64,000 nucleotides of DNA from Obrimoposthia wandeli (GCA_977020255.1 CDROCS010001086.1:124001-188000); one strand, 5' to 3'. Positions 10,779-62,600 are shown, counted from the stretch's first letter. The notes: generated by a model from the sequence alone, not told the origin. Translations and numbers: made by a program.

Positions 10779-11192
10779 GTTCTCAATTTAATGTGTGTGG
10801 AGTATGCAATTTTGTGCATGTGTATGCAATCTAATCCACCCCCACCTAAAGGGCGAGAAGGAGGAAAACCCCTACCAATTTTTTGTGTTACTTGAAATGA
10901 AATTTTACTGATAATTTAAAAAGTGATTAAAGTAGACCACAGGAATCCATATTGACCCCGTCAACTTATCGTAGACTAGATTTCAGATAAAACTTTTAAG
11001 TGAATATATGACTGCTATTTTTAAGAAGTAATTAACAGATTTTAGATTAAAAAATTACTACATGTATGCTAAAATGACAAGATAACTAGGTCAGATTTAT
11101 AAAATTTATAGAAGAAAAAAACTGAATTCAAGATAAAATTTATTTCAATACATTTATTAAATAAAACAAATATAAAACACCATATTAGTTTC

Positions 11193-11570
11193 ACTCAAAG
11201 TCCAAAGAGGCTGAATTTTTAGTCATCAGAATAATATCCATTGAGTCGTATTGAAATATTCCATAGTTCTTCGTCTAAAATTGGAGCAATCAAAAATCTT
11301 AGATAATCTCTAAAAGTTAGACTGGAATCAGTTTCAAACTGGAAAAAATTTACTTCGTATGCATAATCAGGTATGTAAAATCCAAAATATATTTTAATTG
11401 ATCAATATCAGATGTGGTTAAAATTTCAATTAAATATTAATTCTCCACTGTGATATTTCTACAGAATTAAAAACACGTATAATTTGATGCCTCTTTAATA
11501 AATTACATGGTTTTCCTTTGAAATTCTTTCTGAATAATAAAAATTTCCTACATATCTCAGAATAGGATCA
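11193..11570 (-). pseudogene. Frameshifted homolog of the unknown ORF at 60788-61153 (ORF D)
   Basis: Minus-strand translation gives GFYIPDYAYEVNFFQFETDSS...IAPILDEELWNIS...SLFGL*, matching GFYIPDYVYEGNSFQLETDPS...IAPILDEELWNIS...SLFGL* in copy 2. Confidence 0.85.
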
Positions 11571-11969
11571 TTCTAAAATAAATAAACTAATTTAAAACAA
11601 TGTTTATAAAAAATACATATAAGATACAAATATTATGAAATAAAAATAAAAAAACTGTTTACTATTTATTACATGTAAAATGAAAGAAACATGTTAAAGA
11701 AAGATAAATAGTTAAAACATAGGGATATGAGCATGTTCATTTTTCCACATAAGTAGCTTTGTTCCAATTTCTTGTAACAATAAAGCCGAATTCTTACAGT
11801 GCATTGCTTCTTTTTCGGAAACGCATTAACGTCAATTTCTGTTCTATATTAATCTAAAAATACTGCATCAGCTCTTAAGATATAAAATTCGTTCTTATTG
11901 AATGTAAAACTTGGAACTGCCTTTTATACTTTTGGTTTAAGATATTGAAAATCTAAAAAATCTTCATAT

Positions 11970-12316
11970 TGAAATTTTAGGAAGTTTTTGTGTTATGGGA
12001 TTTATGAGAGACAAAACACTGTTGAATGAGATCAATTTACCATTTCGAATTCAAATCAGCTCCATACAATCAATCACAGTTTCAAGTAATCTCGTGAAAC
12101 CAATAAATCTTTATAAAACTGCAGAAAAAATGAAAGAATGCATGTTTGAACCTGAATTTTTCCTGTACTCAGTAATTTGAAGTTTACACCGATATGTGTA
12201 AATATATTTTCAAGTGGTAAAGTTAAGATATTATGATTAAGATATTTGGATTAGTAATACACTGTTAAATAAATTTTAGAAAATCAATTTTATTAAATTT
12301 TGTTATCTTTTCTATA
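11970..12316 (+). pseudogene. TBP-like gene, exon 2 only (copy 1), with a frameshift and stops
   Basis: TTTTAG|GA acceptor, then GSFCVMGF...IQSITVSSNLVKPINLYKTAEKMKECMFEPEF. After a frameshift near 12165-12180 it continues LKFTPICVNIFSSGKVKIL, the C-terminal TBP repeat signature (EPExF...IFxSGKV). Confidence 0.85.
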
Positions 12317-12631
12317 AACAAACCCGTTTAAATTAAAAATTGTTTCAAATGATTAATACTATAAATACAGACAATGAAGTGGATCATTTTATTGATGAAA
12401 TTTTTTCTGGAAATTTATTTTATCCCAATTAAAAAATAATGAAACTACAAGACATAATAATGAAATATTGGTTAGATCACATGGTATTCAAGAATTTAGA
12501 AATCAAACGCAAATAAATAAAATTATAGCCAAATATTCATTAATTAATTTTTGTATTTTATCTACAGTAGCTTTTCAATAAAAAACAAAGCTAATATCGT
12601 GAATTCTTACTAGAGTCCATCTACTACTTAA

Positions 12632-14762
12632 CAGTTCGTCGCTGTTTGGGGTGCATTTTGCACCCCAGGCACATTTCAAGTGTTATAAACTTGAATTAAT
12701 CAAACTTTGAGAATTTCTGCTTTATGACTTTTTAAGTTAGACCATTCTACACATCATATCGGAAAGTCAAACATTTTGTAAACTATGAGGAAGCTCAGAT
12801 ATATTTTTATATGTACTGTCGTTTGGGGTGCATTTTGCACCCCAAACAAATATAATGCATTCTTGTTTTTCAAATCAGAAATCTGACTCTTTAAATTTAT
12901 TTTAGGTACCGAATATTACTATAGTACTCAACCAATCAATAAGCAATTATTGATTCAACAAGAATGTAGATAGGTATATATTGGCAACTCTCATGAGCAT
13001 TCGAATTAGTTGCATTATTATTTTCAGATTGCATTCAATTATATTTCATTCTCTGAATTTGCAATATGTTGCGTCAACTACCACGGAGACTAGCTCGTAA
13101 TGATGCCAACAGACTATTGTTTGGCCAAGATATTGATGATGACGCCGACTCAATGCATGATTTATCAGAGGATGATGTTGCAAACAATATCGATCAGAAT
13201 CTTCCAAATAATGGTGATGGCGATGCAGCCTCTCCCGTTGCTGATGGAGATGAACAAGCTGATGACTTTCTAGATGAAGAAGTTTTGCGCAATTTGTCAA
13301 GTGGTGAAAGTGACGAAGATGATGATCCACAACAGCAAAGAGGATTGATTTCTCCCAATGGACAAATATGGACATTGAATCAACCGGCAGCAGTGGGAAG
13401 GCAACCAGAGGCTAATATATTCCGTGGTGTCCAAGGATTTCGTCGTGGTTTGCACCCCGAATCACGATTAGAATCTTTTGAAGTATTCTTTGACAGTTCA
13501 GTTGATTGTGCGATAATGTTTACAAACTTGTATGGTCGCAGATTGGCCCGCGAAAAAGGCGTTAAATGGAAGCAAGTGACTGCAAATGAAATGCGAGCAT
13601 TCATTGGACTTCATTTTCTTGCAGGCGCCCTAAAGGCACATCATCGAGTACTGGAGGAAATGTGGTCGATCGTGATGGTCAATCTCTTTTTAGGGCCACC
13701 ATGAGCTGTCAGCGCTTCAAACAACTGAAGCAAGCATTACGCTTTGACGATCCCATAATGAGGGATAGGGAGGATCCCCTGGCTCCCATTCGTACAATTG
13801 TGCAATATGTGAATGGCAGTCTGGTCTATGCTTATTCGTCAGGCCCATTCATTACTGTTGATGAGCAACTGGTAGAATTCCATGGCAGAGTTCGTTTAAG
13901 ACGTTATATACCTACAAAACCAGGCAAATTTGGTATAGAAATGTACTGGTCCGTGGATGCAGACAACAGTTTCCCACTGCGGTGTTTAGTATACATTGGT
14001 GAGAAGACACTTTTGAGACAAGAGAAAGAAGACTCCCCATCAATTCCGGAAGCCGTCGTCTGGAACATTGCTCGTCCCTTGTTGAACGAAGGAAGGAACA
14101 TCACAGGAGATAATTACTTCTCATCTCTTCACCTATGCCAGAGATTGTTGGAACGGCAGACTACATATGTCGGCACAATGCGACAGAATAAGCGAGAGAA
14201 TCCACCATTAGCAAAGACAACAACTTGACGACACAGGGGTGATAGCATTCACTACTACACTGATGATGCCACTCTTTGCTCCTTTTGTGACAAGGGCAAA
14301 AACCCAGTTTTACTAATTTCAACCCAACATAAAACCCAACAAAATCACCCTGATAGAAAACCAGAAATCGTGATCTTCTATAACAGTACTAAAGCCGGTG
14401 TGGACACCCTTAATAAATTGAATAGGACATTCTCATCGAAGCGCAAGTGTTGCCGGTGGCCTTACTCGATCTTCTTTTCGTTAGCAGATAATGTGTGCTA
14501 TGCTGCCCTGTTGTTATGGAATTCGTCCGAGGTCAACAACGATTCACATTATGCATTCAAAAGAGAGCTGGCATATGAATTGTGTACACCACTGATTCGA
14601 CAAAGATCCACTATCCCCAACCGCCGTAAGACCATCAAAACGGCAATTGAACGTCTTGGTTTACAACCTCCTATGGTGCCACTCACTCGTCAACAAGCAG
14701 TTCGCACTCAGGGAAGGTGCTACATGTTCCCGAGAGGTCCAGACGCAAACAACGGAAAATAG
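12632..14762 (+). mobile_element. piggyBac (PGBD4-like) transposon; left end present, right end not found
   Basis: TTAA at 12628-12631 is followed by CAGTTCGTCGCTGTTTGGGGTGCATTTTGCACCCC. The palindromic motif GGGGTGCA-TTT-TGCACCCC occurs at 12648-12666 and again at 12825-12843. The transposase pseudogene follows. Confidence 0.85.
13066..14762 (+). pseudogene. piggyBac DDD transposase with one frameshift (~13665-13690), one nonsense codon (TGA 14226-14228) and a truncated C-terminal Cys-rich domain
   Basis: Motifs FRATMSCQRFKQLKQALRFDD, ITVDEQLVEFHGR, YIPTKPGKFGI, ITGDNYFSS, TTYVGTMRQNKRE, YNSTKAGVDTLNK. The frame continues in register from 14229 into ORF 14370. It ends QGRCYMFPRGPDANNGK* without the remaining cysteines. 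Confidence 0.93.
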
Positions 14763-27414: not shown

Positions 27415-28069
27415 ATGAAAATAAAGATATTTTTATTGATTAATGGCACGTCAAATTTATATTATTAACAAAAATCTTAGTCTAATCATCAAATATGAAT
27501 ACATATCCAATGTAAATTTTCTAACTAATGATTTAAATGCAAAAAAGAAATTAAATAAACATTCTTACTAATATTTAATTTACATCTTTATTATAAATAA
27601 TATTAACCTACCGGCTCTCCTTGTTGCTAAAAAAATGAAATTTTAATCATTTATGTATGTTAACTAAGCCACACAAAATTGTTTATGAATAATGATTTTT
27701 AAATAATAAAAACGAAAATTTGTATAAATTCTTTAAAAAAATGAAAAATAAAGATATTTTTATAGATTAATGGCACGTCAAATTTATATTATTAACAAAA
27801 ATCTTAGTCTAATCATCAAATATGAATACATATCCAATGTAAATTTTTTAACTAATGATTTAAATGCAAAAAAGAAATTAAATAAACATTCTTACTAATA
27901 TTTAATTTACATCTTTATTATAAATAATATTAACCTACCGGCTCTCCTTGTTGCTAAAAAATGAAATTTTAATTATTTATGTATGTTAACAAAGCCACAC
28001 AAAATTGTTTATGAATAATGATTTTTAAATAATAAAAACGAAAATTTATATAAATTCTTTAAAAAAATG
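27415..28069 (+). repeat. Near-identical head-to-tail tandem duplication, period ~327 bp
   Basis: TGGCACGTCA occurs at 27444 and 27771. The entire unit, including AACCTACCGGCTCTCCTTGTTGC, is repeated with only a few substitutions. Confidence 0.95.
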
Positions 28070-30920: not shown

Positions 30921-32059
30921 TAGTAAATGTCTGTTACAAATTCAACAAGACGATTTTCCAGAAATTTCAAAAGCGCTAAGAATTATGAATCAAGCAATCA
31001 ATCAAAGTGAGCGAATAATAAATTGCCAGTTCACTGTCAAACCCGGTCGCACAAATTTCATCATTTATGTAGACAAGTACGATAGAAGTGTTAGGTTTAG
31101 GAATTGTTAAAAATAAAATAATTAATCGAATTTATAGTGAAATAAGAATCCTTGAAAGCAAGGTTATAAATTAAATAAAATTAAAATTTAGAATTAAATT
31201 GTTAAAAGTAAAAGGAAAATTGAATATTAGGGACCACGAAGGTCGTGTGTGATGTGTAGGTATATATTGAAGTTTAGACTTAACAAAAGGGCCCAAAAAG
31301 ATATAACCCAGAAAATAAGGTTAGTTAGTAAGAAGAAAGAAGCCAATTAATAGAAGATTAATAGAAGATTATTAAATCATTGAGAGAAGATCGGAGTCAG
31401 AATCCATTAGGCCCGAGAAGAAAAAAGAAAGTTGCTGAGTATCTATTAGCGCCACTTAGCGCCAGACAAGCTATCCCGGAATTGTCGAGAAATCTATTAG
31501 AAGCAGCTCTCCGCAAACAGCTGTCTTATCGAGAAAGTAAGAGCACTTAGTTAAGTGATCTCTATTGTTAAATTTCCTAGGAGAAGTTCCCGCCGACAGA
31601 AATCAATTAACATCGTCGCCAAGTCCATTAGTGCCTGTGGAGAGGAGACCGTCGTCAAGAGGTGAGGACTTTGCTTTAAGTGCTTAAGTGCTCTAAATTT
31701 GGAGAGATCAGTATAAAAGGAAATTAACCAAACTCTAGTTTCCAGAGAAAACGAGGAAAACTAATTTGGAAAAATCGGATTGGAACTCGAGAAGAAAAGC
31801 GATCCTACACTGCAACCAGAGGACCGTGCACACACAGATAGTCCGAAAACCGGCCTCTCCATCTAACCAGAGCGAGCCCATTCGACAGTCGTCAAGTCCA
31901 AGAGAACGCAGCAGAGGCTAAAATCGGATCGGAACAATTGGCTTCGTAGAGACTGCGCCTCCAGACCCAGAAATCTCCAAGCAAGGCAACCGCTCTCAAT
32001 AAGACCGAAATCAAGGAACGGACAGACGGGAACGAGGTGAGAGACAGAGTGAGAGGTTT

Positions 32060-32592
32060 AAAATAAGAATCTTGAATTTGATAATAAAGATAAAGATTAG
32101 AATTGATTTTTAAAATAAGAATATTGAATTTTAAAATAAGAATATTGAATTTTAAAATAAGAATCTTGAATTTGATAATAAAGATAAAGATTGGAATTGA
32201 TTTATAAAATAAGAATATTGAATTTTAAAATAAGAATCTTGAATTTGATAATAAAGATAAAGATTGGAATTGATTTTTAAAGTAAGAATATTGAATTTTA
32301 AAATAAGAATCTTGAATTTGATAATAAAGATAAAGATTGGAATTGATTTTTAAAATAAGAATATTGATTTTTAAAATAAGAATCTTGAATTTGATAATAA
32401 AGATAAAGATTGGAATTGATTTTTAAAATAAGAATATTGATTTTTAAAATAAGAATCTTGAATTTGATAATAAAGATAAAGATTGGAATTGATTTTTAAA
32501 ATAAGAATATTGAATTTTAAAATAAGAATCTTGAATTTGATAATAAAGATAAAGATTGGAATTGATTTTAAACAATAAGAATATTGAATTTT
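32060..32592 (+). repeat. Minisatellite: 7 copies of a 73-bp unit with an internal ~21-bp subunit
   Basis: GAATCTTG recurs at 32067, 32161, 32234, 32307, 32380, 32453 and 32526. The period is 73 bp; the first interval is 94 bp because of one extra AAAATAAGAATATTGAATTTT subunit. Confidence 0.97.
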
Positions 32593-34019
32593 GAATAAAC
32601 TGGTAAACTAATTGGAAAGAAACAAATATAAAGTAGAAGGATATTCGAACGATTTTGTAAGTAAATTTTGTAAGAGAAAATTAATAAATTGTTCCGAGGG
32701 TATTGAGGTTTCGAGTAACTACTCTACCAAACCAAATAACTTACATTACCACATTTTAGAGCAACAAGCTCTGTAAACTCATCCCCTATTTTAGAGCAAC
32801 AGCTCTGTAAAATCTATAAATTCAAATTGCCCACAGTTTTAGAGTACGACTCTCACGCCAACCAAACATAAATTAAAATCGATACGTGGTTCATCCCCAC
32901 TGGTGTAGAGACTTACAGAAGTCTTAGGAATTTACTGTATCTTTTTAGAAATACGTACGTAAACGTATTGTTGTGTTTTAGTCTAGTGTGTTACCAATAA
33001 ACGATTTCCTACATTAGAAAACGTTGTTTTAAACCCTTCAGATTAAGAGACGTCAAAACAAACACCTTCAGATAAGTAATTGAGACAGACAACCATAGCA
33101 CTAAGTAGGCCACGACCAACTTTAAGACCTGCTTCTATTAGAACTCACGTTGGGGCCCTCCGCACACAAGAGGATCTATACAAGTCTCGTATAGAAACCC
33201 CAACAGAAGTAGTAATATGTAGATTAGTATTAAATACTCAAAACCTGAAACTTTGAGAAAATGCAGAACATTATTACAGATAAGTGTTTTTTCAATATTT
33301 AGTACAAAATAGAAGCTGAACCACAGACTTCATCCATGAAACATATTGACAGAGGTCACACATTCATTCACCCACTTACACAGATCACAGACAAGCATAC
33401 ATAAACTAGACAGAGTTGCTGAAGTCATCAACAAATAAATTGCAGGAAACAGTCGTCCACCTAGAATCAATGGTTCGGTCAGTTGATCCATTGATTGATT
33501 GGGGGTTCGAGAGTGTCACATCTGTTATCTAGTAGTAGGTTTCGTTCTCCAACCATGAGCCTTCCTTCCACTTTCGGAGAAGGTATTTATGGAGAATAAA
33601 TATTTGCAAAGATATTTGTAAAGATTTTGTAAAAAGAAAATATTGACATTGATGAGCAACCATGGTTGCAAGAGCGTGGGTAATACCACTACATATTATA
33701 ATGATGGGAGTTGGGACCCAGCAACCCCTAAAGTTGTTGACGGTAGAAGGAAACCTGATAAATTGCAAAAGTGTAGTCCAGTCTGAGAGAAACGGTGTAA
33801 GGATAGAAACAGGTGGTGCGTTAATGCATGAGCCTTTACAGCACTATGTGAAGGTAAATAATTCGATAGACAACAAGGACGGCGGATGGGGATGTTTCAA
33901 CCTGGACTTCGATGTCTGGACAGATGACAAGGTTAAATAGGACATATCTTGGGTTTAATCAAAAACCAGAAATATCCTACTAGCAATAATCGTTTTTTAT
34001 TATTTACGACACTAAAAGA

Positions 34020-44929: not shown

Positions 44930-45633
44930 TAAGAAAGGATTTAAATAAACTAATAAAGCACTTATTTTAATACAACTTATGTATTTTTTCCGTGATTCAA
45001 AGCTTACAAAATCTTGAACTTACTTCGATATCGGTTACATTTTGCCGCTAAATGAAAACAATATACATTTATATATACACTTCAATTCAAAAAATGTATT
45101 TTCATGCTTTCAACGTTATTATCTAAAATTATTAATATTGGGAAAAATATGAAAATAAAAGTAGCTAGAGCCGCTGTTATTCAACCTTTTCGAGACTGTA
45201 ACCCATTTTACTTACTGGAACAATGCAATGTACCACTTATGTTAATAACCGAATAAGTATGTAATTCAAATTAATTGTCGGTTAAATAAGAAAGGATTTA
45301 AATGAAACTAAGAAATGCACTTATTTTAATACAACTTTTGTATTTTTTCGTGATTCATAGTTTACAAAATCTTGAACTTACTTCGATATCGGTTACATTT
45401 TGCCGCTAAATGAAAACAATATACATTTATATATACACTTCAATTCACAAAATTTATTTTCATGCTTTCAACGTTATTATCTAAAATTATTAATATTGCA
45501 AAATATATGGAAATAAAAGTAGCTAGAGCCGCTGATTTCAACCTTTTCAGGACTGTAACCCATTTTATTTACTGGAACAATGCAATGTACCACTTATGTT
45601 AATAACCGAATAAGCATGTAAATCAAATTAATT
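44930..45633 (+). repeat. Head-to-tail tandem duplication, period ~357-358 bp
   Basis: TAAGAAAGGATTTAAAT occurs at 44930 and 45287, and CTTCGATATCGG at 45023 and 45381. Scattered substitutions separate the copies. Confidence 0.95.
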
Positions 45634-52312: not shown

Positions 52313-52489
52313 AGATTATCATGTTTTTGCTTCCCTCATGCATAGCTTTCATGTGTTTTTTATTTTTATTTTTTGGACAATCTGTAAATATTTTAGTAAA
52401 TATTTAGATTATCATGTTTTTGCTTCCCTCATGCATAGCTTTCATGTGTTTTTTATTTTTATTTTTTGGACAATCTGTAAATATTTTAG
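52313..52489 (+). repeat. 84-bp tandem duplication with a 9-nt junction insert
   Basis: 52313-52396 and 52406-52489 are identical; the spacer TAAATATTT copies the adjacent end of the unit. Confidence 0.92.
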
Positions 52490-58099: not shown

Positions 58100-58759
58100 T
58101 TCTCCTGGGTCGATTGCTCTTAAAAACGGAATTGTTACCTGTCATGGAGTCAAAATTCTGTTATTCTTTATGGTAGCTATTCTTACTTCTTTTCTTTGTT
58201 TCCTTCTTAACAAGAACCTTTTCATTAACTTTTCCCTCTTCTTTCATTATATATATTCTCTAACTTTGCAGCTGTGATTTGTTGGGTCTTTATTACGTCT
58301 CGAAGATATTTTTTATTATTTGTTGTTTGATGCTTGATTTTTTACTTCTATTCTAAAATTTATTTCAAACGGTGAAAATTCAATTTGTGGCAATAAATCG
58401 TGCAATCATTTTCCTGGGTTAGAATACGCTATTGTCGTAACAATCATATATCTTACCACGCGTATAACTCTTTCTGCTAAACCGTTAGTTTGATGTTGAT
58501 ATGGTGCTGTAAGTTAAAGTCCAATACCAAATTCTCATAGCCAATTGTTAAAATAATTTCCCGTAAATATTCGTCTTTTATCTGTTAAAATTCTCTTAGG
58601 TTTCTTAAATTTATATATCTAATTTGTCTCAGGTGCTTTAGTAATTGTTAATTCATCTTCTTTTGTAGTTGCTGGTAGTGATACCAGTTTATTAAATCGA
58701 TAGATTACTATCAAGATATATTTCATTTTATATCTTCCATCCTACATGTGAGCTATATC
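58100..58759 (-). pseudogene. Gypsy integrase core remnant (3' part, left of the inserted element)
   Basis: The minus strand reads DIAHM...KYILIVIYRFNKLVSL, KPKRILTD and LTAPYQHQTNGLAERVIR. Confidence 0.85.
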
Positions 58760-58978
58760 AGTAGGTGGATGTGTCCAGTCTAATCCACACTCCCCCACTG
58801 TCCTTTAAAACCGCGCATGTGTGTGGAGTGAAATTTCGTGCATGTGTGTAAAGTGAAATTTTCTACACCCCAACACTCAAAAAAAAACTAATTAACCCCA
58901 TATTACACCCTTTAAATTTGAAAATGTCATAGTGCTCCCCAAAGAGTGAGGAAGGATTTGCTACAATTTTGGGTAATT

Positions 58979-59329
58979 ATGCAGGAATATATCATAGATG
59001 TTGAGGCTTTCGTTAACAATAATGGTGATTATATTATAAAAGAATTATGTATTATGGATGTATGCGACATTTTTCATCCTTTGCATTTCATTTTTCATAT
59101 AGATATCCTCTTTAGAAGTTTAGATTATAAGAAAGATTTTATTAATTTCTATCTAACTAATTATTTTCATTTATTAAAATGGAAAGAAGGTCATAAGGCT
59201 TTTTGTGAAATATGTATTTTCGATAAAGTAAAATCGAATTTTGACATTGATAATGAAATTTTTTATGTTTTAGATGGAATGGACGGCAAAAAGTATAAGA
59301 CTTTTAAAAAATATTTTCTTTACCCCTAA
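58979..59329 (+). CDS. DEDD/DnaQ-like small exonuclease-fold protein, probably C-terminally truncated
   Basis: The first in-frame ATG is at 58979 (the track starts at GTG 58946). IIDVEAF...IIKEL is an ExoI-like DxE motif, followed by HFIF...YLTNYFHLLKWKEG. The stop coincides with the point where homology to copy 1 begins. Confidence 0.5.
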   Translation: MQEYIIDVEAFVNNNGDYIIKELCIMDVCDIFHPLHFIFHIDILFRSLDYKKDFINFYLTNYFHLLKWKEGHKAFCEICIFDKVKSNFDIDNEIFYVLDGMDGKKYKTFKKYFLYP

Positions 59330-59468
59330 TTTTTCCAGAAAATATTTCGCCGGAAAGACGATCCACTTCATTGTCTTTATTTGTAGTATTATTCATTTGA
59401 AACAATAAGTTTAAACGGGTTTGTTTATAGAAAAGATAACAAGATGTAATAAGATATATTTTCTAAAA

Positions 59469-59924
59469 TCAAATCAACAATGTCTGGATAATCAAATTTT
59501 TCAATCCCAATATCATAACTTTACCACTGGAAAATATATTTAAACATAGCGGTTTAAACTTCAAATAACTGAGAGCAGGAAAAGTTTCTGGTTCAAACAT
59601 GCATTCTTCTTTCATTTTCTCTGCAGTTTTAAAAAGATTTATCTGTTTCCCAAGATTAGCCGAAATCGTGATTGATTGTATTGCAGTGATTCGAATTCCA
59701 AATGGTAAATTGAACCCAATCATTGGTATTTTGAATCCCATAACACGACAATTTCCTAAAAGAATTCAAAATGAAAATAAAATAAAAAACTAACCTGTAG
59801 GAAAAATAACAACTGTGAAATTGTCAAACTTTTCCACATATTGTCTCGGCTTTCATGCATTGAATGGTAAGTACGAAACATCATCTTCTGTTCTACCTTT
59901 ATAATTTATATTTACGAGTTTCAT
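59469..59924 (-). pseudogene. Two-exon TATA-binding-protein-like gene: complement(join(59469..59755,59795..59924)); in-frame TGA at codon 24 and a probable 3' frameshift
   Basis: Spliced product: MKLVNINYKGRTEDDVSYLPFNA*KPRQYVEKFDNFTVVIFPTG|NCRVMGFK...IQSITISANLGKQINLFKTAEKMKEECMFEPETFPALSYLKFKPLCLNIFSSGKVMILGLK. Both TBP repeats are visible (IFPTGxxxVMG and FEPETFPAL...IFSSGKVMILG). The ORF track mislabels exon 2 as '+'; its ATG is the reverse complement of CAT at 59739-59741. Confidence 0.88.
59756..59794 (-). other. 39-nt GT-AG spliceosomal intron in the TBP-like gene
   Basis: Donor ACAG|GTTAGT, a T-rich body and acceptor TTTTAG|GA. It contains in-frame TAG and TGA, and its removal restores IFPTGNCRVMG. 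The acceptor is conserved in copy 1 (~11965-11972). Confidence 0.75.
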
Positions 59925-60009
59925 TAGACTAAAATTGTATTCTGTCAAATCTTCTTTATATATGTCTGAACCTGCTTTTTTATTGCACGTTTCTTGCAAA
60001 CCTATTATA

Positions 60010-60160
60010 ATTGGAAGATATATTTCTTCCAATCAAATTTGATTTTTAATATGGATTTAGTCCAATCAAATTCAATGCTTTAGTTATATTAACCAATGAG
60101 ATTCATGTCTTTGTTAGAAATTAGTATAAAAGAATGCGCTATTGGAGGACAAATCACAGT
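60010..60160 (+). promoter_or_regulatory. Divergent intergenic promoter: three CCAAT boxes, TATA box, CAGT initiator-like motif
   Basis: CCAAT at 60029, 60062 and 60093, inverted ATTGG at 60010, TATAAAAG at 60125-60132, CAGT at 60157, and the ATG of ORF C at 60163. Confidence 0.6.
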
Positions 60161-60162
60161 AA

Positions 60163-60645
60163 ATGCATTCATATCAAAGACAATTATCAACGATGGACGA
60201 TAGCCAACGGATATTAAGCGGTGACGAAGATATAGAAATGTTTGAAGAATCGGATAAGGATATGTATAAAGAAGTGAAACAATATTTCAAATACAAAGTC
60301 AGATTCTTGAAGAAGGCTCAACTGATTGCTTTAGTAAATCCTGTGACAATTGAAAGAAGAAAGTTCAGCTATTATCTATCAAATATTCAAAGACCAGATT
60401 TGCAATATCTTAAACAGAAAGTTGAAAAGACAGTTCCGAATTTTACTTTCAATAAGAACGAATTTTATATCCGAGGACCTGATGAAGCATTTCTAGATGA
60501 CTATGGAAGATATGTTGATATTGATGCGTTTCCGAAAAAGAAGCAATGAACTGTAACAATTCGACTGTATGGTTACAAGAAAGATGAAATGGGAACAAAG
60601 TTGCCTATGTGGAAAATTGAAGGTGCTCATATTTATATGATTTAA
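60163..60645 (+). pseudogene. Unknown ~160-aa protein (ORF C) interrupted by TGA at 60547-60549
   Basis: The track ORF of 128 aa continues in frame past the stop as TVTIRLYGYKKDEMGTKLPMWKIEGAHIYMI*. Copy 1 has TGC at the equivalent codon (FPKKKQCTVRIRLYCYKK). AATAAA lies at 60657. Confidence 0.75.
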
Positions 60646-60787
60646 TTATTTCATGTAATAAATTGTAATCGGTTTTACTATGTTTCTTTCATTTGGCAAT
60701 TAATAATCAGTTTTATTTTTTAAATATTTGTATCTTATATATTTTTTTTTATAAACATTGTTTTTTAATCAGTTTCCTTATTTTAGA

Positions 60788-61153
60788 ATGGATAAGAGAT
60801 GTGTAGCAAATTTTTATTATCCAGAAAAAATTTCAAAAGGAAAACTATGTAATATATTAAAGAGGCATCAAATTATACGAGTTATGAATCCTGTGAAAAT
60901 ATCAAAAGTGGAGAATAAATATCTCATCGAAATTTTAACAACATCTGATATTGATCAATTGAAAAATATTTTGGGATTTTACATTCCTGATTATGTATAT
61001 GAAGGAAATTCTTTCCAGCTTGAAACTGATCCCAGTCTGGATTTTAAAGATGATCTAGGATATTCGATTGCTCCAATTCTAGATGAAGAACTATGGAATA
61101 TCTCAATGAATATTTTGCTGATGACAGGAAAATGCAGCCTCTTTGGACTTTGA
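60788..61153 (+). CDS. Unknown ~121-aa protein (ORF D), open in this copy
   Basis: Open from ATG 60788 (the track starts at 60758 on a non-ATG codon). It is conserved in copy 1 (11193-11570) and followed by AATAAA at 61181. No recognisable motif. Confidence 0.65.
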   Translation: MDKRCVANFYYPEKISKGKLCNILKRHQIIRVMNPVKISKVENKYLIEILTTSDIDQLKNILGFYIPDYVYEGNSFQLETDPSLDFKDDLGYSIAPILDEELWNISMNILLMTGKCSLFGL

Positions 61154-61667
61154 GTGAAGCCAATATGTTGTTTTATGTTTAATAAATGTTTTGAAAAATA
61201 ATTTTGACTCGTATTTTGTTTTTTCTCCTCTAAATTATATAGATCTAATTTTCTCTTATAAATCTGACCTAAATATCTAACATGTAGTAATTTATTAAGC
61301 TTTCTTAAAAATAGTAGTAATATATTATTTGAAATCTCGTCTGTGATAAGCCGTCGTGTCCAATATGGATTCCCGTGGTCTTCTCTAACCACTTTGGAGA
61401 TTGGTGGAAAATTTCAAAGTAAAATTTTAAAAAAATGTGGGGTGGACCTCCACCCTTTCCTCCTTTAGGTGGAATAGAGACACACATACACGAAATTTCA
61501 CTCCACACACATGCACGGTTTTAAAGGACTGTGGTACCCCCCCTATTCGTGGCTTCTTTTAATTTTTTCTCTACACACATGCACGAAATTTCACTCCACA
61601 TACATGCACAGTTTTAAAGGATAGTGGGGGGAGGGGGTGTGGATTAGACCAGACACATCCACCTACT

Positions 61668-62600
61668 TATATCGCGAACAATTTCATATAAAAAATTATT
61701 TAACTAATGGAATAAATATTTATTTTGTTCTGCTTGTTTAAATTGTTCTTTCGCTACAATTTACGCATTTTGATTTGCTTTTTTTCTTGAAACATTCTTT
61801 TCAAATATAAATTATCCTTCATATATTTAAAACATTTTGCATTCTTAGGTGACAAAGATATTAGTGAATTTCATTAATAATTTCATTAGCGTTCTTCAGA
61901 GGTATGAAAATTAAATCTTTAAAATTTTGTTCAAAATAAAGAATATCCTAACAAAGTTTACGTTTTTCTTTCATCTGATAAAACCAACTTATTTTACATT
62001 CTTCTGATAAATCCTTACTTTTCATTTGGAGGAAAACATTCATTTCTTTCACATGAATATCTTCTTGTTGTATTTGTCTTATCTTACTCAAGAAAGTGTC
62101 TTCATTTAGTTAGTAAATATATCGTATCTTAGATCTCTTGTCTTGTACATATATGTATATATTATTGAATACTTCCCTTAATAATTTATAACGTTCGTCT
62201 TGGTTCTAACTATAAACAAGGATATCATCCTTTGAACAGCAAACCATTCAATATTTTAAGCATCACACTCTGAAATGTTTTTGATATTGTAGCCAACTCA
62301 AATATTAACTGATTGAAACAAAATTGTCCCAGTTTTGTACTGAAGACTATTTTCTAGATGTAGTTGGTAATAAGTTTGTTCAATATATAGTATTGTAAAT
62401 ATGTTTTCATCACCCAGACAATCGAAGAAAGGTTGCCACAATCCCAACAAAAACATGCTTCTGACTGGAGTTCTTCACTTTGTGTGACACGTAATTGTTT
62501 GGCTAAGTTAAATTTCTATTTGCTTTAAGGAAATTTTCTGGCATTTTTCTTCTATTATTTTGGTTTTGTGTGTATTTATATGTATTTTATCTTCTTTTTT
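61668..62600 (-). pseudogene. Gypsy pol remnant (5' part including the integrase zinc finger), right of the inserted element
   Basis: The minus strand reads EIINEIH*YLCHLRMQ (HxxxxH zinc finger, ~61830-61890) and YEIVRDI, which abuts the TSD and continues as DIAHM on the other side of the insertion. Confidence 0.75.

What the first reader, a model, noticed from the sequence alone, without database searches (positions are those of the whole stretch)
58754..61673. Candidate new system: a miniature Maverick/Polinton-like element carrying a TBP-like gene cassette
Seen: 2,908 bp, ~91-96-bp TIRs starting AGTAGG, a perfect TATATC 6-bp TSD, and densely packed convergent and divergent ORFs (DEDD-like >, < ORF E, < TBP-like, ORF C >, ORF D >) with promoter and polyA motifs. 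Established knowledge: autonomous Mavericks are roughly 15-20 kb, have AG...CT ends and 6-bp TSDs from a retroviral-like integrase, and encode pPolB, integrase, ATPase, protease and capsid proteins. None of these genes is present here. Inference: a non-autonomous derivative or satellite mobilised in trans whose cargo includes a basal transcription-factor homolog. I do not recognise TBP as a described core Maverick gene, though I cannot search the literature.
Basis: partly seen in the sequence, partly recalled or inferred. Interest (0 to 1): 0.92.

Follow-up and report, generated by a model that had tools for sequence, protein, structure and literature searches.

The report
Decayed mini-Maverick relic with TBP-like gene
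This 2.9-kb stretch is the worn-out, gutted remnant of a Maverick/Polinton virus-like element. Its TBP-like gene is not special cargo: it is one of three small accessory genes that a whole lineage of full-size Mavericks carries, and all four genes in this copy are broken or cut short.

Summary
The element spans 58760-61667 (2,908 bp). It has inverted ends of 102 and 107 nt (90% identical), termini AGTAGG...CCTACT, a perfect 6-bp TATATC duplication, and a TBP-domain ORF above Pfam's cutoff.

The element is Maverick-derived. Relatives of three of its gene families (TBP-like, ORF1, ORF C/D) lie side by side in metagenomic contigs. Those contigs also encode protein-primed PolB, rve integrase, an A32-type ATPase and an adenovirus-type protease.

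It is not a new system. The TBP-like gene is a conserved gene of that Maverick lineage, already noted in passing in the adintovirus paper. ORF1 has lost its last ~50 codons. The TBP-like gene and ORF C each carry one in-frame stop, and ORF D carries one frameshift.

A second, partial copy at 10791-12413 does not share the internal junction. The window therefore gives no evidence that the mini form was copied as such.

Two side results concern the intact relatives. The TBP-like protein has one full TBP repeat plus a helix-less half repeat. The ORF1 family has a DEDD-exonuclease/MAEL-like fold, also predicted for an adintovirus protein and several ichnovirus ORFs.

The relic itself is ordinary. 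The gene module is of moderate interest.

The parts
58754..58759 (.). Left copy of the 6-bp target-site duplication (TATATC)
   Evidence: Read directly. Identical to 61668-61673. Chance about 7e-4.
58760..58861 (+). Left terminal inverted repeat, starting AGTAGG. Contains two tandem 25-nt subterminal repeats.
   Evidence: 90% identical to the right end.
58979..59329 (+). ORF1: the N-terminal ~115 codons of a 155-190-aa family with a DEDD-exonuclease/MAEL-like fold. The C-terminal Cys/His-rich ~50 residues are missing (3' truncation). No internal stop.
   Evidence: tblastn to related contigs at E 1e-10 to 4e-17. Alignments A3 and A6. AF2 model of relative P0173 with pLDDT 96. Foldseek results.
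59332..59468 (-). Spacer downstream of the TBP-like gene, holding a ~30-codon ORF remnant ('ORF E'). It is shared with the second copy. Homology between the two copies ends at its low-coordinate bound.
59469..59921 (-). TBP-like gene, broken by one in-frame stop. It also holds a 39-nt GT..AG stretch that relatives lack and whose 3' part the second copy shares (probable short intron). Its C-terminal helix is about 15 residues shorter than in relatives.
   Evidence: Pfam PF00352. phmmer against 1.84 billion proteins, best relatives 50-57% identical. Alignment A2. tblastn with the L027 protein at E 2e-30. for the shared stretch.
59922..60162 (.). Divergent intergenic region between the TBP-like gene and ORF C, with three CCAAT strings and TATA-like boxes facing both genes
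   Evidence: Read directly. The same divergent layout occurs in L001, L010, L017, L023, L027 and L038. CCAAT is not enriched in relatives.
60163..60645 (+). ORF C, a member of a ~110-aa family of unknown function, with an N-terminal extension. Broken by one in-frame stop.
   Evidence: Relatives lie beside TBP-like genes in 18 of 39 informative loci.
60758..61183 (+). ORF D, tandem paralog of ORF C. Broken by one frameshift.
61480..61534 (-). Extra inner copy of the 55-nt subterminal repeat
   Evidence: (D1, I2).
61561..61667 (-). Right terminal inverted repeat, ending CCTACT
61668..61673 (.). Right copy of the 6-bp target-site duplication (TATATC)
10791..12413 (-). Second, partial and inverted copy of the element's interior. 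It is 74-80% identical to 59332-59778 and 60396-61512. It lacks the outer ends, ORF1 and the stretch in between.

Best explanation
The stretch is a dead, internally deleted remnant of a Maverick/Polinton (adintovirus-type) element. A parent element, or an already shortened derivative, was inserted by a retrovirus-like rve integrase. That integrase joins the AG...CT ends to a 6-bp staggered cut, which leaves the TATATC duplication. The core genes (pPolB, integrase, ATPase, protease, capsid) were lost through a rearrangement. That rearrangement joined the interior of ORF1 to the region just downstream of the TBP-like gene.

What remains are the two inverted ends and three kinds of small accessory genes that this lineage keeps next to one another: a DEDD/MAEL-fold gene (ORF1), a TBP-like gene, and two copies of a ~110-aa gene (ORF C and ORF D). 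All have since decayed, so the copy makes no working protein and cannot move by itself.

In intact relatives, the TBP-like protein most likely acts as an element-encoded TATA-binding initiation factor for the element's own TATA-bearing promoters.

What is shown: the ends, the duplication, the homologies, the synteny, the gene damage and the predicted folds. What is inferred: the integrase mechanism, the order of deletion and insertion, and the roles of the proteins.
For: Ends and duplication:
- Inverted ends, AGTAGG//CCTACT termini and a 6-bp duplication.
- Vertebrate Mavericks have 6-bp duplications and (AGT)2//(ACT)2 or (AG)3//(CT)3 end motifs (PMC8097293). The window matches 5 of 6 bases at each end.

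Synteny in bona fide Mavericks:
- L027 carries ORFC-like, TBP-like, ATPase, integrase, a capsid candidate, protease, ORF1-like and pPolB (PF03175, E 9e-28).
- L003 carries Pox_A32-type ATPase, rve+Chromo integrase, Peptidase_C5, ORF1-like and TBP-like.
- L088-L092 show the order integrase ... ORF1-like, TBP-like.
- Of 39 family-type loci with at least 0.9 kb upstream of the TBP-like gene, 15 have ORF1-like and 18 have ORFC-like just upstream.
- Of 17 family-type loci with at least 1.5 kb downstream, 10 have the ATPase within 2.5 kb.

Signs of deletion and decay:
- Window ORF1 stops about 50 residues short of the family.
- The homology between the window's two copies ends at that same bound.
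- Damage counts: TBP-like 1 stop, ORF C 1 stop, ORF D 1 frameshift.
- The two ends have drifted to 90% identity.
- No core-gene similarity in the window.

Folds:
- TBP-like family: AF2 pLDDT 96.6. PDB TBPs match at up to E 6e-22.
- ORF1 family: AF2 pLDDT 96.2. Nearest folds are Orn, RNase AS, TREX1 and the MAEL domain (TM 0.70), plus an adintovirus protein (TM 0.75).
Against: - No full-length element with these same ends was seen. The inverted ends have no match in any related locus, so the link to Mavericks rests on gene homology and end features.
- ORF1 lies on the opposite strand to the one a simple deletion of the L027-type layout would give. The parent layout is unknown, or an inversion was involved.
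- The host genome was not identified, so copy number and sibling copies could not be examined.
- The roles of the proteins are inferred from folds only.
Confidence: 0.85

Rival explanations
1. The 2.9-kb form is a member of a non-autonomous mini-Maverick family. On this reading the deletion came first, and the short form was then copied and inserted at new sites by proteins supplied by full-length elements.
For: Both ends and an intact 6-bp duplication are kept, and the size is small. At least two copies of related sequence lie within 64 kb, so the family is repeated in this genome.
Against: The second copy does not share the ORF1/spacer junction and has no outer ends. It therefore does not show that the short form was copied. 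A full-length insertion that was later deleted in place leaves exactly the same ends and duplication. No end-flanked mini elements were seen among 93 related loci.
Confidence: 0.3
2. It belongs to another inverted-repeat DNA transposon superfamily that also makes 6-bp duplications, and it picked up Maverick gene fragments.
For: A 6-bp duplication and inverted ends are not unique to Mavericks (general knowledge). No integrase is present to tie the ends to a family.
Against: The end motif fits the Maverick pattern. The whole interior consists of gene families that are neighbours inside Mavericks. No transposase of any kind lies inside the element.
Confidence: 0.03
3. The cassette is a host-domesticated, working set of genes: a TBP paralog and partners recruited from a Maverick.
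For: Promoter-like and polyA-like strings flank the ORFs. A probable short intron lies in the TBP-like gene.
Against: Every gene is broken or truncated. The second copy is even more damaged. The best relatives are only 50-57% identical, and where flanking genes could be read they lie in virus-like contigs rather than among host genes.
Confidence: 0.02

Closest known systems
Maverick/Polinton elements (adintoviruses, polintoviruses)
   Same: Inverted ends, a 6-bp target duplication and an AGT-type end motif. The window's three gene families have relatives inside elements that carry pPolB, rve integrase, A32-type ATPase and adenain-type protease.
   Different: 2.9 kb instead of 15-20 kb. None of the defining core genes is present. 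All remaining genes are broken.
Internally deleted, non-autonomous derivatives of DNA transposons
   Same: The ends are kept and the interior is lost. Any movement would depend on proteins made elsewhere.
   Different: Copying of this short form is not shown. The interior still holds recognisable accessory genes rather than bare spacer.
TATA-box binding protein (PF00352) and the TBP-like proteins of large DNA viruses
   Same: One repeat matches TBP in sequence and in predicted fold, and two Phe positions within it are invariant in the alignment. The nearest viral folds are giant-virus TBPs.
   Different: About 150 aa in total. The first repeat is reduced to four strands with no long helix. Cellular and giant-virus TBPs have two full repeats.
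MAEL domain of Maelstrom and DEDDh 3'-5' exonucleases (Orn, RNase AS, TREX1)
   Same: The ORF1 family has the same predicted fold (TM up to 0.70). Like MAEL (PMC4408791), it pairs that fold with a conserved Glu and a Cys/His cluster.
   Different: No sequence model detects it. The pattern of conserved residues is not the published ECHC set. Whether it cuts nucleic acid is unknown.
Uncharacterized protein of Drosophila-associated adintovirus 2 (A0A7D4ZHK6) and ichnovirus ORFs (GfV-D6-ORF1, AsIV ORFs)
   Same: Best viral fold matches to the ORF1 family (TM 0.75 for the adintovirus protein, E 1e-8 to 1e-5) at a similar size.
   Different: Only 17-21% identical. No function is assigned to any of them.

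Membership tests
Maverick/Polinton | Terminal inverted repeats | tested here: met
   102- and 107-nt arms, 90% identical.
Maverick/Polinton | 6-bp target-site duplication | tested here: met
   TATATC on both sides. Chance about 7e-4.
Maverick/Polinton | AG...CT-type end motif, such as (AGT)2//(ACT)2 | tested here: met
   AGTAGG//CCTACT, 5 of 6 bases at each end. The motif is taken from PMC8097293.
Maverick/Polinton | [quoted passage not shown] | tested here: not met
   No tblastn or Pfam signal in the window. Present in related contig L027.
Maverick/Polinton | Retrovirus-like (rve) integrase | tested here: not met
   None in the window. Present in 24 related loci.
Maverick/Polinton | Packaging ATPase, adenain-type protease and capsid genes | tested here: not met
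   None in the window. ATPase and protease were confirmed by Pfam in L003. The capsid candidate has no Pfam hit, and its fold was not modelled.
Maverick/Polinton (derivative) | The remaining genes have relatives inside bona fide elements, in the same neighbourhood | tested here: met
Non-autonomous family copied in trans | Several copies share the same internal junction, at different sites, each with its own duplication | tested here: not met
   The only other copy in the window does not share the junction or the ends. The rest of the genome is not testable with these tools.
TBP (PF00352) | Match to the family model above the curated cutoff | tested here: met
   46.5 bits against a cutoff of 22.9. 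PDB TBPs match at E 6e-22 with the family profile.
TBP (PF00352) | Two complete repeats forming the saddle | tested here: not met
   Relatives have a single matched stretch. Both repeats of solved TBPs map to the same part of the profile. The model shows a helix-less four-strand first half.
TBP (PF00352) | Binding to TATA DNA | not testable with these tools
   Two Phe positions in the full repeat are invariant in alignment A7. That they are the DNA-contacting pair is inferred, not tested.
MAEL domain | DEDD-nuclease fold | tested here: met
   Foldseek hits 9nhs_F (TM 0.70), 4ybg and 5af0, using a relative's model with pLDDT 96.
MAEL domain | ECHC zinc-binding set; match to a sequence model | tested here: inconclusive
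   E23 and H65 are invariant, and C77, C80, C139, H144, C148 and C153 are conserved in at least 90% of rows. Their equivalence to ECHC was not established. No Pfam hit for any of 49 members.
DEDDh exonuclease | Four acidic catalytic residues plus His | tested here: inconclusive
   The first-strand Asp is kept in at least 90% of members, and the following Glu in most (Gln in some). No invariant Asp is seen later in the protein.

The most novel reading that the evidence does not exclude
A widespread Maverick/adintovirus lineage carries a conserved regulatory module that has not been properly described. The module has three parts: its own one-and-a-half-repeat TBP, a MAEL-like DEDD-fold protein, and a ~110-aa partner. 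With it, the element would steer host RNA polymerase II to its own promoters and perhaps interfere with piRNA-type silencing. On this reading the window's 2.9-kb element is one member of a short family that kept just this module and was copied by full-length elements.
Probability: 0.12. Interest if true: 0.7.

Novelty: new member of a known kind. Interest (0 to 1): 0.38.

Why it matters
The relic in this window matters little. It is one more decayed transposon fragment, useful mainly for annotating the host genome correctly so that its ORFs are not called as host genes.

The useful by-product is the picture of its intact relatives. One lineage of Mavericks consistently keeps three small genes together: a shortened TBP-like gene, a DEDD/MAEL-fold gene and a ~110-aa gene of unknown function. 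The papers I could search mention the TBP-like gene only in a figure legend, and the other two not at all.

A virus-like element that nearly always relies on host transcription yet brings its own TATA-binding factor is worth a specialist's look. So is a fold shared with a transposon-silencing factor. Both ideas can be examined with sequence, structure and expression data alone.

Tried and rejected
- Word-based protein search with window ORF1 found nothing. The family only appeared through tblastn against contigs reached via the TBP-like gene, and then through a profile search.
- Exact look-ups of window ORFs found no record, so the host was not identified.
- The viral-contig scan gave one distant locus only.
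- The inverted ends have no match in any related locus. No end-flanked mini elements were found among related loci.
- I considered a conserved CCAAT-box promoter, because the window and L001 both show such strings. Across 59 loci the motif is at background level (0.49 against 0.48 per 200 nt), so I dropped the idea.
- The ORF C/D family has no Pfam hit, no significant PDB sequence hit and no profile relation to the TBP-like family.
- The ORF1 family has no Pfam hit, Maelstrom included, and no PDB sequence hit.
- I considered a code in which TGA is read as sense, because both in-frame stops are TGA. I rejected it: ORF D has a frameshift, ORF1 is truncated, and the second copy is further decayed, so ordinary decay explains everything.
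- Rfam and tRNA scans of the window were empty.
- Literature searches for TBP or Maelstrom together with Polinton or Maverick gave only the Starrett figure legend.
Full report
WHAT IS THERE

The element runs from 58760 to 61667 (2,908 bp, 30% GC). It begins AGTAGG and ends CCTACT, and TATATC flanks it on both sides. The two ends align as inverted repeats over 58760-58861 and 61561-61667. In that alignment 92 of 102 ungapped columns are identical, and there is one 5-nt indel. The 31-nt terminus occurs nowhere else in the window and in none of 100 shuffles. Identical 6-bp flanks would arise by chance about 7 times in 10,000 at this base composition. The ends contain short subterminal repeats, and the right end has one extra inner copy at 61480-61534.

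THE GENES IN THIS COPY

Pfam recognises only one ORF: the minus-strand ORF 59469-59741 is a TBP domain (PF00352, E 3e-12, above the cutoff). ORF C and ORF D are paralogs of each other. Comparison with relatives (alignments A2, A3, A4) shows that none of the four genes is intact.

- ORF1 (58979-59329) lacks the last ~50 residues of its family, including a conserved Cys/His cluster.
- The TBP-like gene (59469-59921) has one in-frame stop. It also holds a 39-nt GT..AG stretch that relatives lack, and its last helix is shortened.
- ORF C (60163-60645) has one in-frame stop.
- ORF D (60758-61183) has one frameshift.

The 3' part of the 39-nt stretch, including its AG, is shared by the second copy in the window. 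It therefore predates the split of the two copies and is probably a short intron.

WHERE THE RELATIVES LIVE

An exhaustive phmmer search with the open TBP-like piece against 1.84 billion proteins gave 650 hits. The best are 130-177-aa proteins, 46-57% identical, and the match always starts near residue 44. They come from metagenomes and carry either no name or the name TBP. Their contigs are Maverick/Polinton-type.

- L003 carries a Pox_A32-type ATPase, an rve integrase with a chromodomain, an adenovirus-type protease, an ORF1 relative and then the TBP-like gene.
- L027 carries, in order, an ORF C relative, TBP-like, ATPase, integrase, three further ORFs, a 403-aa capsid candidate, protease, an ORF1 relative and a convergent protein-primed PolB (PF03175, E 9e-28).
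- Tara Pacific contigs L088-L092 repeat the order integrase ... ORF1-like, TBP-like.

A metagenome scan added 80 loci. I then looked at the 39 family-type loci with enough upstream sequence. Of these, 15 have an ORF1 relative and 18 have an ORF C relative directly upstream of the TBP-like gene. Of the 17 loci with enough downstream sequence, 10 have the ATPase within 2.5 kb.

So all three gene families in the window are neighbours of one another inside real Mavericks. Together with the 6-bp duplication and an end motif that fits the published (AGT)2//(ACT)2 pattern at 5 of 6 bases (PMC8097293), this makes a Maverick origin very likely.

WHY IT IS A RELIC AND NOT A SYSTEM

No core gene is detectable anywhere in the 64 kb. 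ORF1 is cut short exactly where the sequence downstream of the TBP-like gene begins.

The window holds a second, inverted, partial copy at 10791-12413. It is 74-80% identical to 59332-59778 and 60396-61512. Homology between the two copies stops at that same bound. The second copy has no ORF1, no outer ends and a further internal loss.

The junction in the finding's copy is therefore a rearrangement point that the other copy does not share. The window offers no sign that the short form was itself copied. The ends have drifted to 90% identity, and every gene is damaged, so the insertion is old.

Whether the deletion came before or after integration cannot be told from one copy. I put the 'copied as a mini family' reading at about 0.3.

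One feature is unexplained. ORF1 lies on the strand opposite to the TBP-like gene, whereas in every related contig the two share a strand. Either the parent in this host had another layout, or an inversion came with the deletion.

WHAT THE PROTEINS LOOK LIKE IN INTACT RELATIVES

TBP-like family:
- The AlphaFold model of P0002, built with 35 relatives, has pLDDT 96.6.
- It shows a first half of four strands with no long helix, followed by one complete TBP repeat of strands and two helices.
- A profile of the family matches solved TBPs at up to E 6e-22. Both repeats of those TBPs map to the same part of the profile.
- Two Phe positions in the full repeat are invariant in the alignment. That they correspond to the DNA-kinking Phe pair of TBP is my inference.
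- The nearest viral folds are giant-virus TBPs.

ORF1 family:
- It has 50 database members, all unnamed and without a Pfam domain.
- The model of P0173 has pLDDT 96.2.
- Its nearest solved folds are DEDDh exonucleases (Orn, RNase AS, TREX1) and the MAEL domain of Maelstrom (9nhs_F, TM 0.70).
- Its nearest viral folds are an uncharacterized protein of Drosophila-associated adintovirus 2 (TM 0.75) and ichnovirus ORFs.
- The family keeps the first-strand Asp in at least 90% of members and the following Glu in most. It has an invariant Lys-Glu pair, a His and a Cys/His cluster, but no clear later acidic residues.
- This resembles the way MAEL combines a DEDD fold with a zinc site (PMC4408791). The equivalence is not established.

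ORF C/D family: function remains unknown.

PRIOR KNOWLEDGE

Starrett et al. [quoted passage not shown] I found no further treatment of it. No paper in the library pairs Maelstrom or MAEL with Polintons or Mavericks. Short deleted Polinton derivatives are familiar from repeat libraries; this rests on my own knowledge and was not checked here.

VERDICT

The relic itself is ordinary. The conserved TBP-like / DEDD-MAEL-fold / 110-aa module in its intact relatives is a modest lead.

Noticed in passing
window 10791-12413: A second, inverted, partial copy of the Maverick-derived interior, 74-80% identical to the finding's copy. It has no outer ends and no ORF1, so the family is repeated in this genome.
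   Followed up: yes
window 13066-14762: A piggyBac-type transposase (PF13843, E 4e-38) split over three overlapping or adjacent ORFs, so probably decayed. It lies a few hundred bases from the second Maverick-derived copy.
   Followed up: partly
window 31977-32633: An AT-rich tandem array with a 73-nt unit (6.4 copies, 97% matches) built from 21- and 31-nt subrepeats.
   Followed up: no
window 27418-28069; 44985-45633; 52313-52489: Three two-copy tandem duplications with units of 327, about 357 and 93 nt, at 93-100% identity.
   Followed up: no
window 1-64000: No tRNA gene and no Rfam family in 64 kb. GC is 23-36% throughout. The host organism was not identified.
   Followed up: partly
L027 222-719 (-): A ubiquitin-conjugating enzyme gene (PF00179, E 2e-12) next to the ORFC-like gene at the edge of a Maverick contig. 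Whether it is host or element cargo was not resolved.
   Followed up: no
L012 9122-12526 (-); L027 10209-12755 (-): The large polymerase ORFs carry a stretch matching Endonuclease VII (PF02945) at about the cutoff, ahead of the PolB domain.
   Followed up: no
L001 854-6447: Two MATH/TRAF-domain genes flank the Maverick-type region of this 16-kb metagenomic contig, probably host genes beside an integrated element.
   Followed up: no
L002 4291-4827 and 8749-9291: Two diverged ORF1-family genes in one Maverick contig. L055 and L082 have the order TBP-like then ORF1-like, so the position of this gene varies within the lineage.
   Followed up: partly
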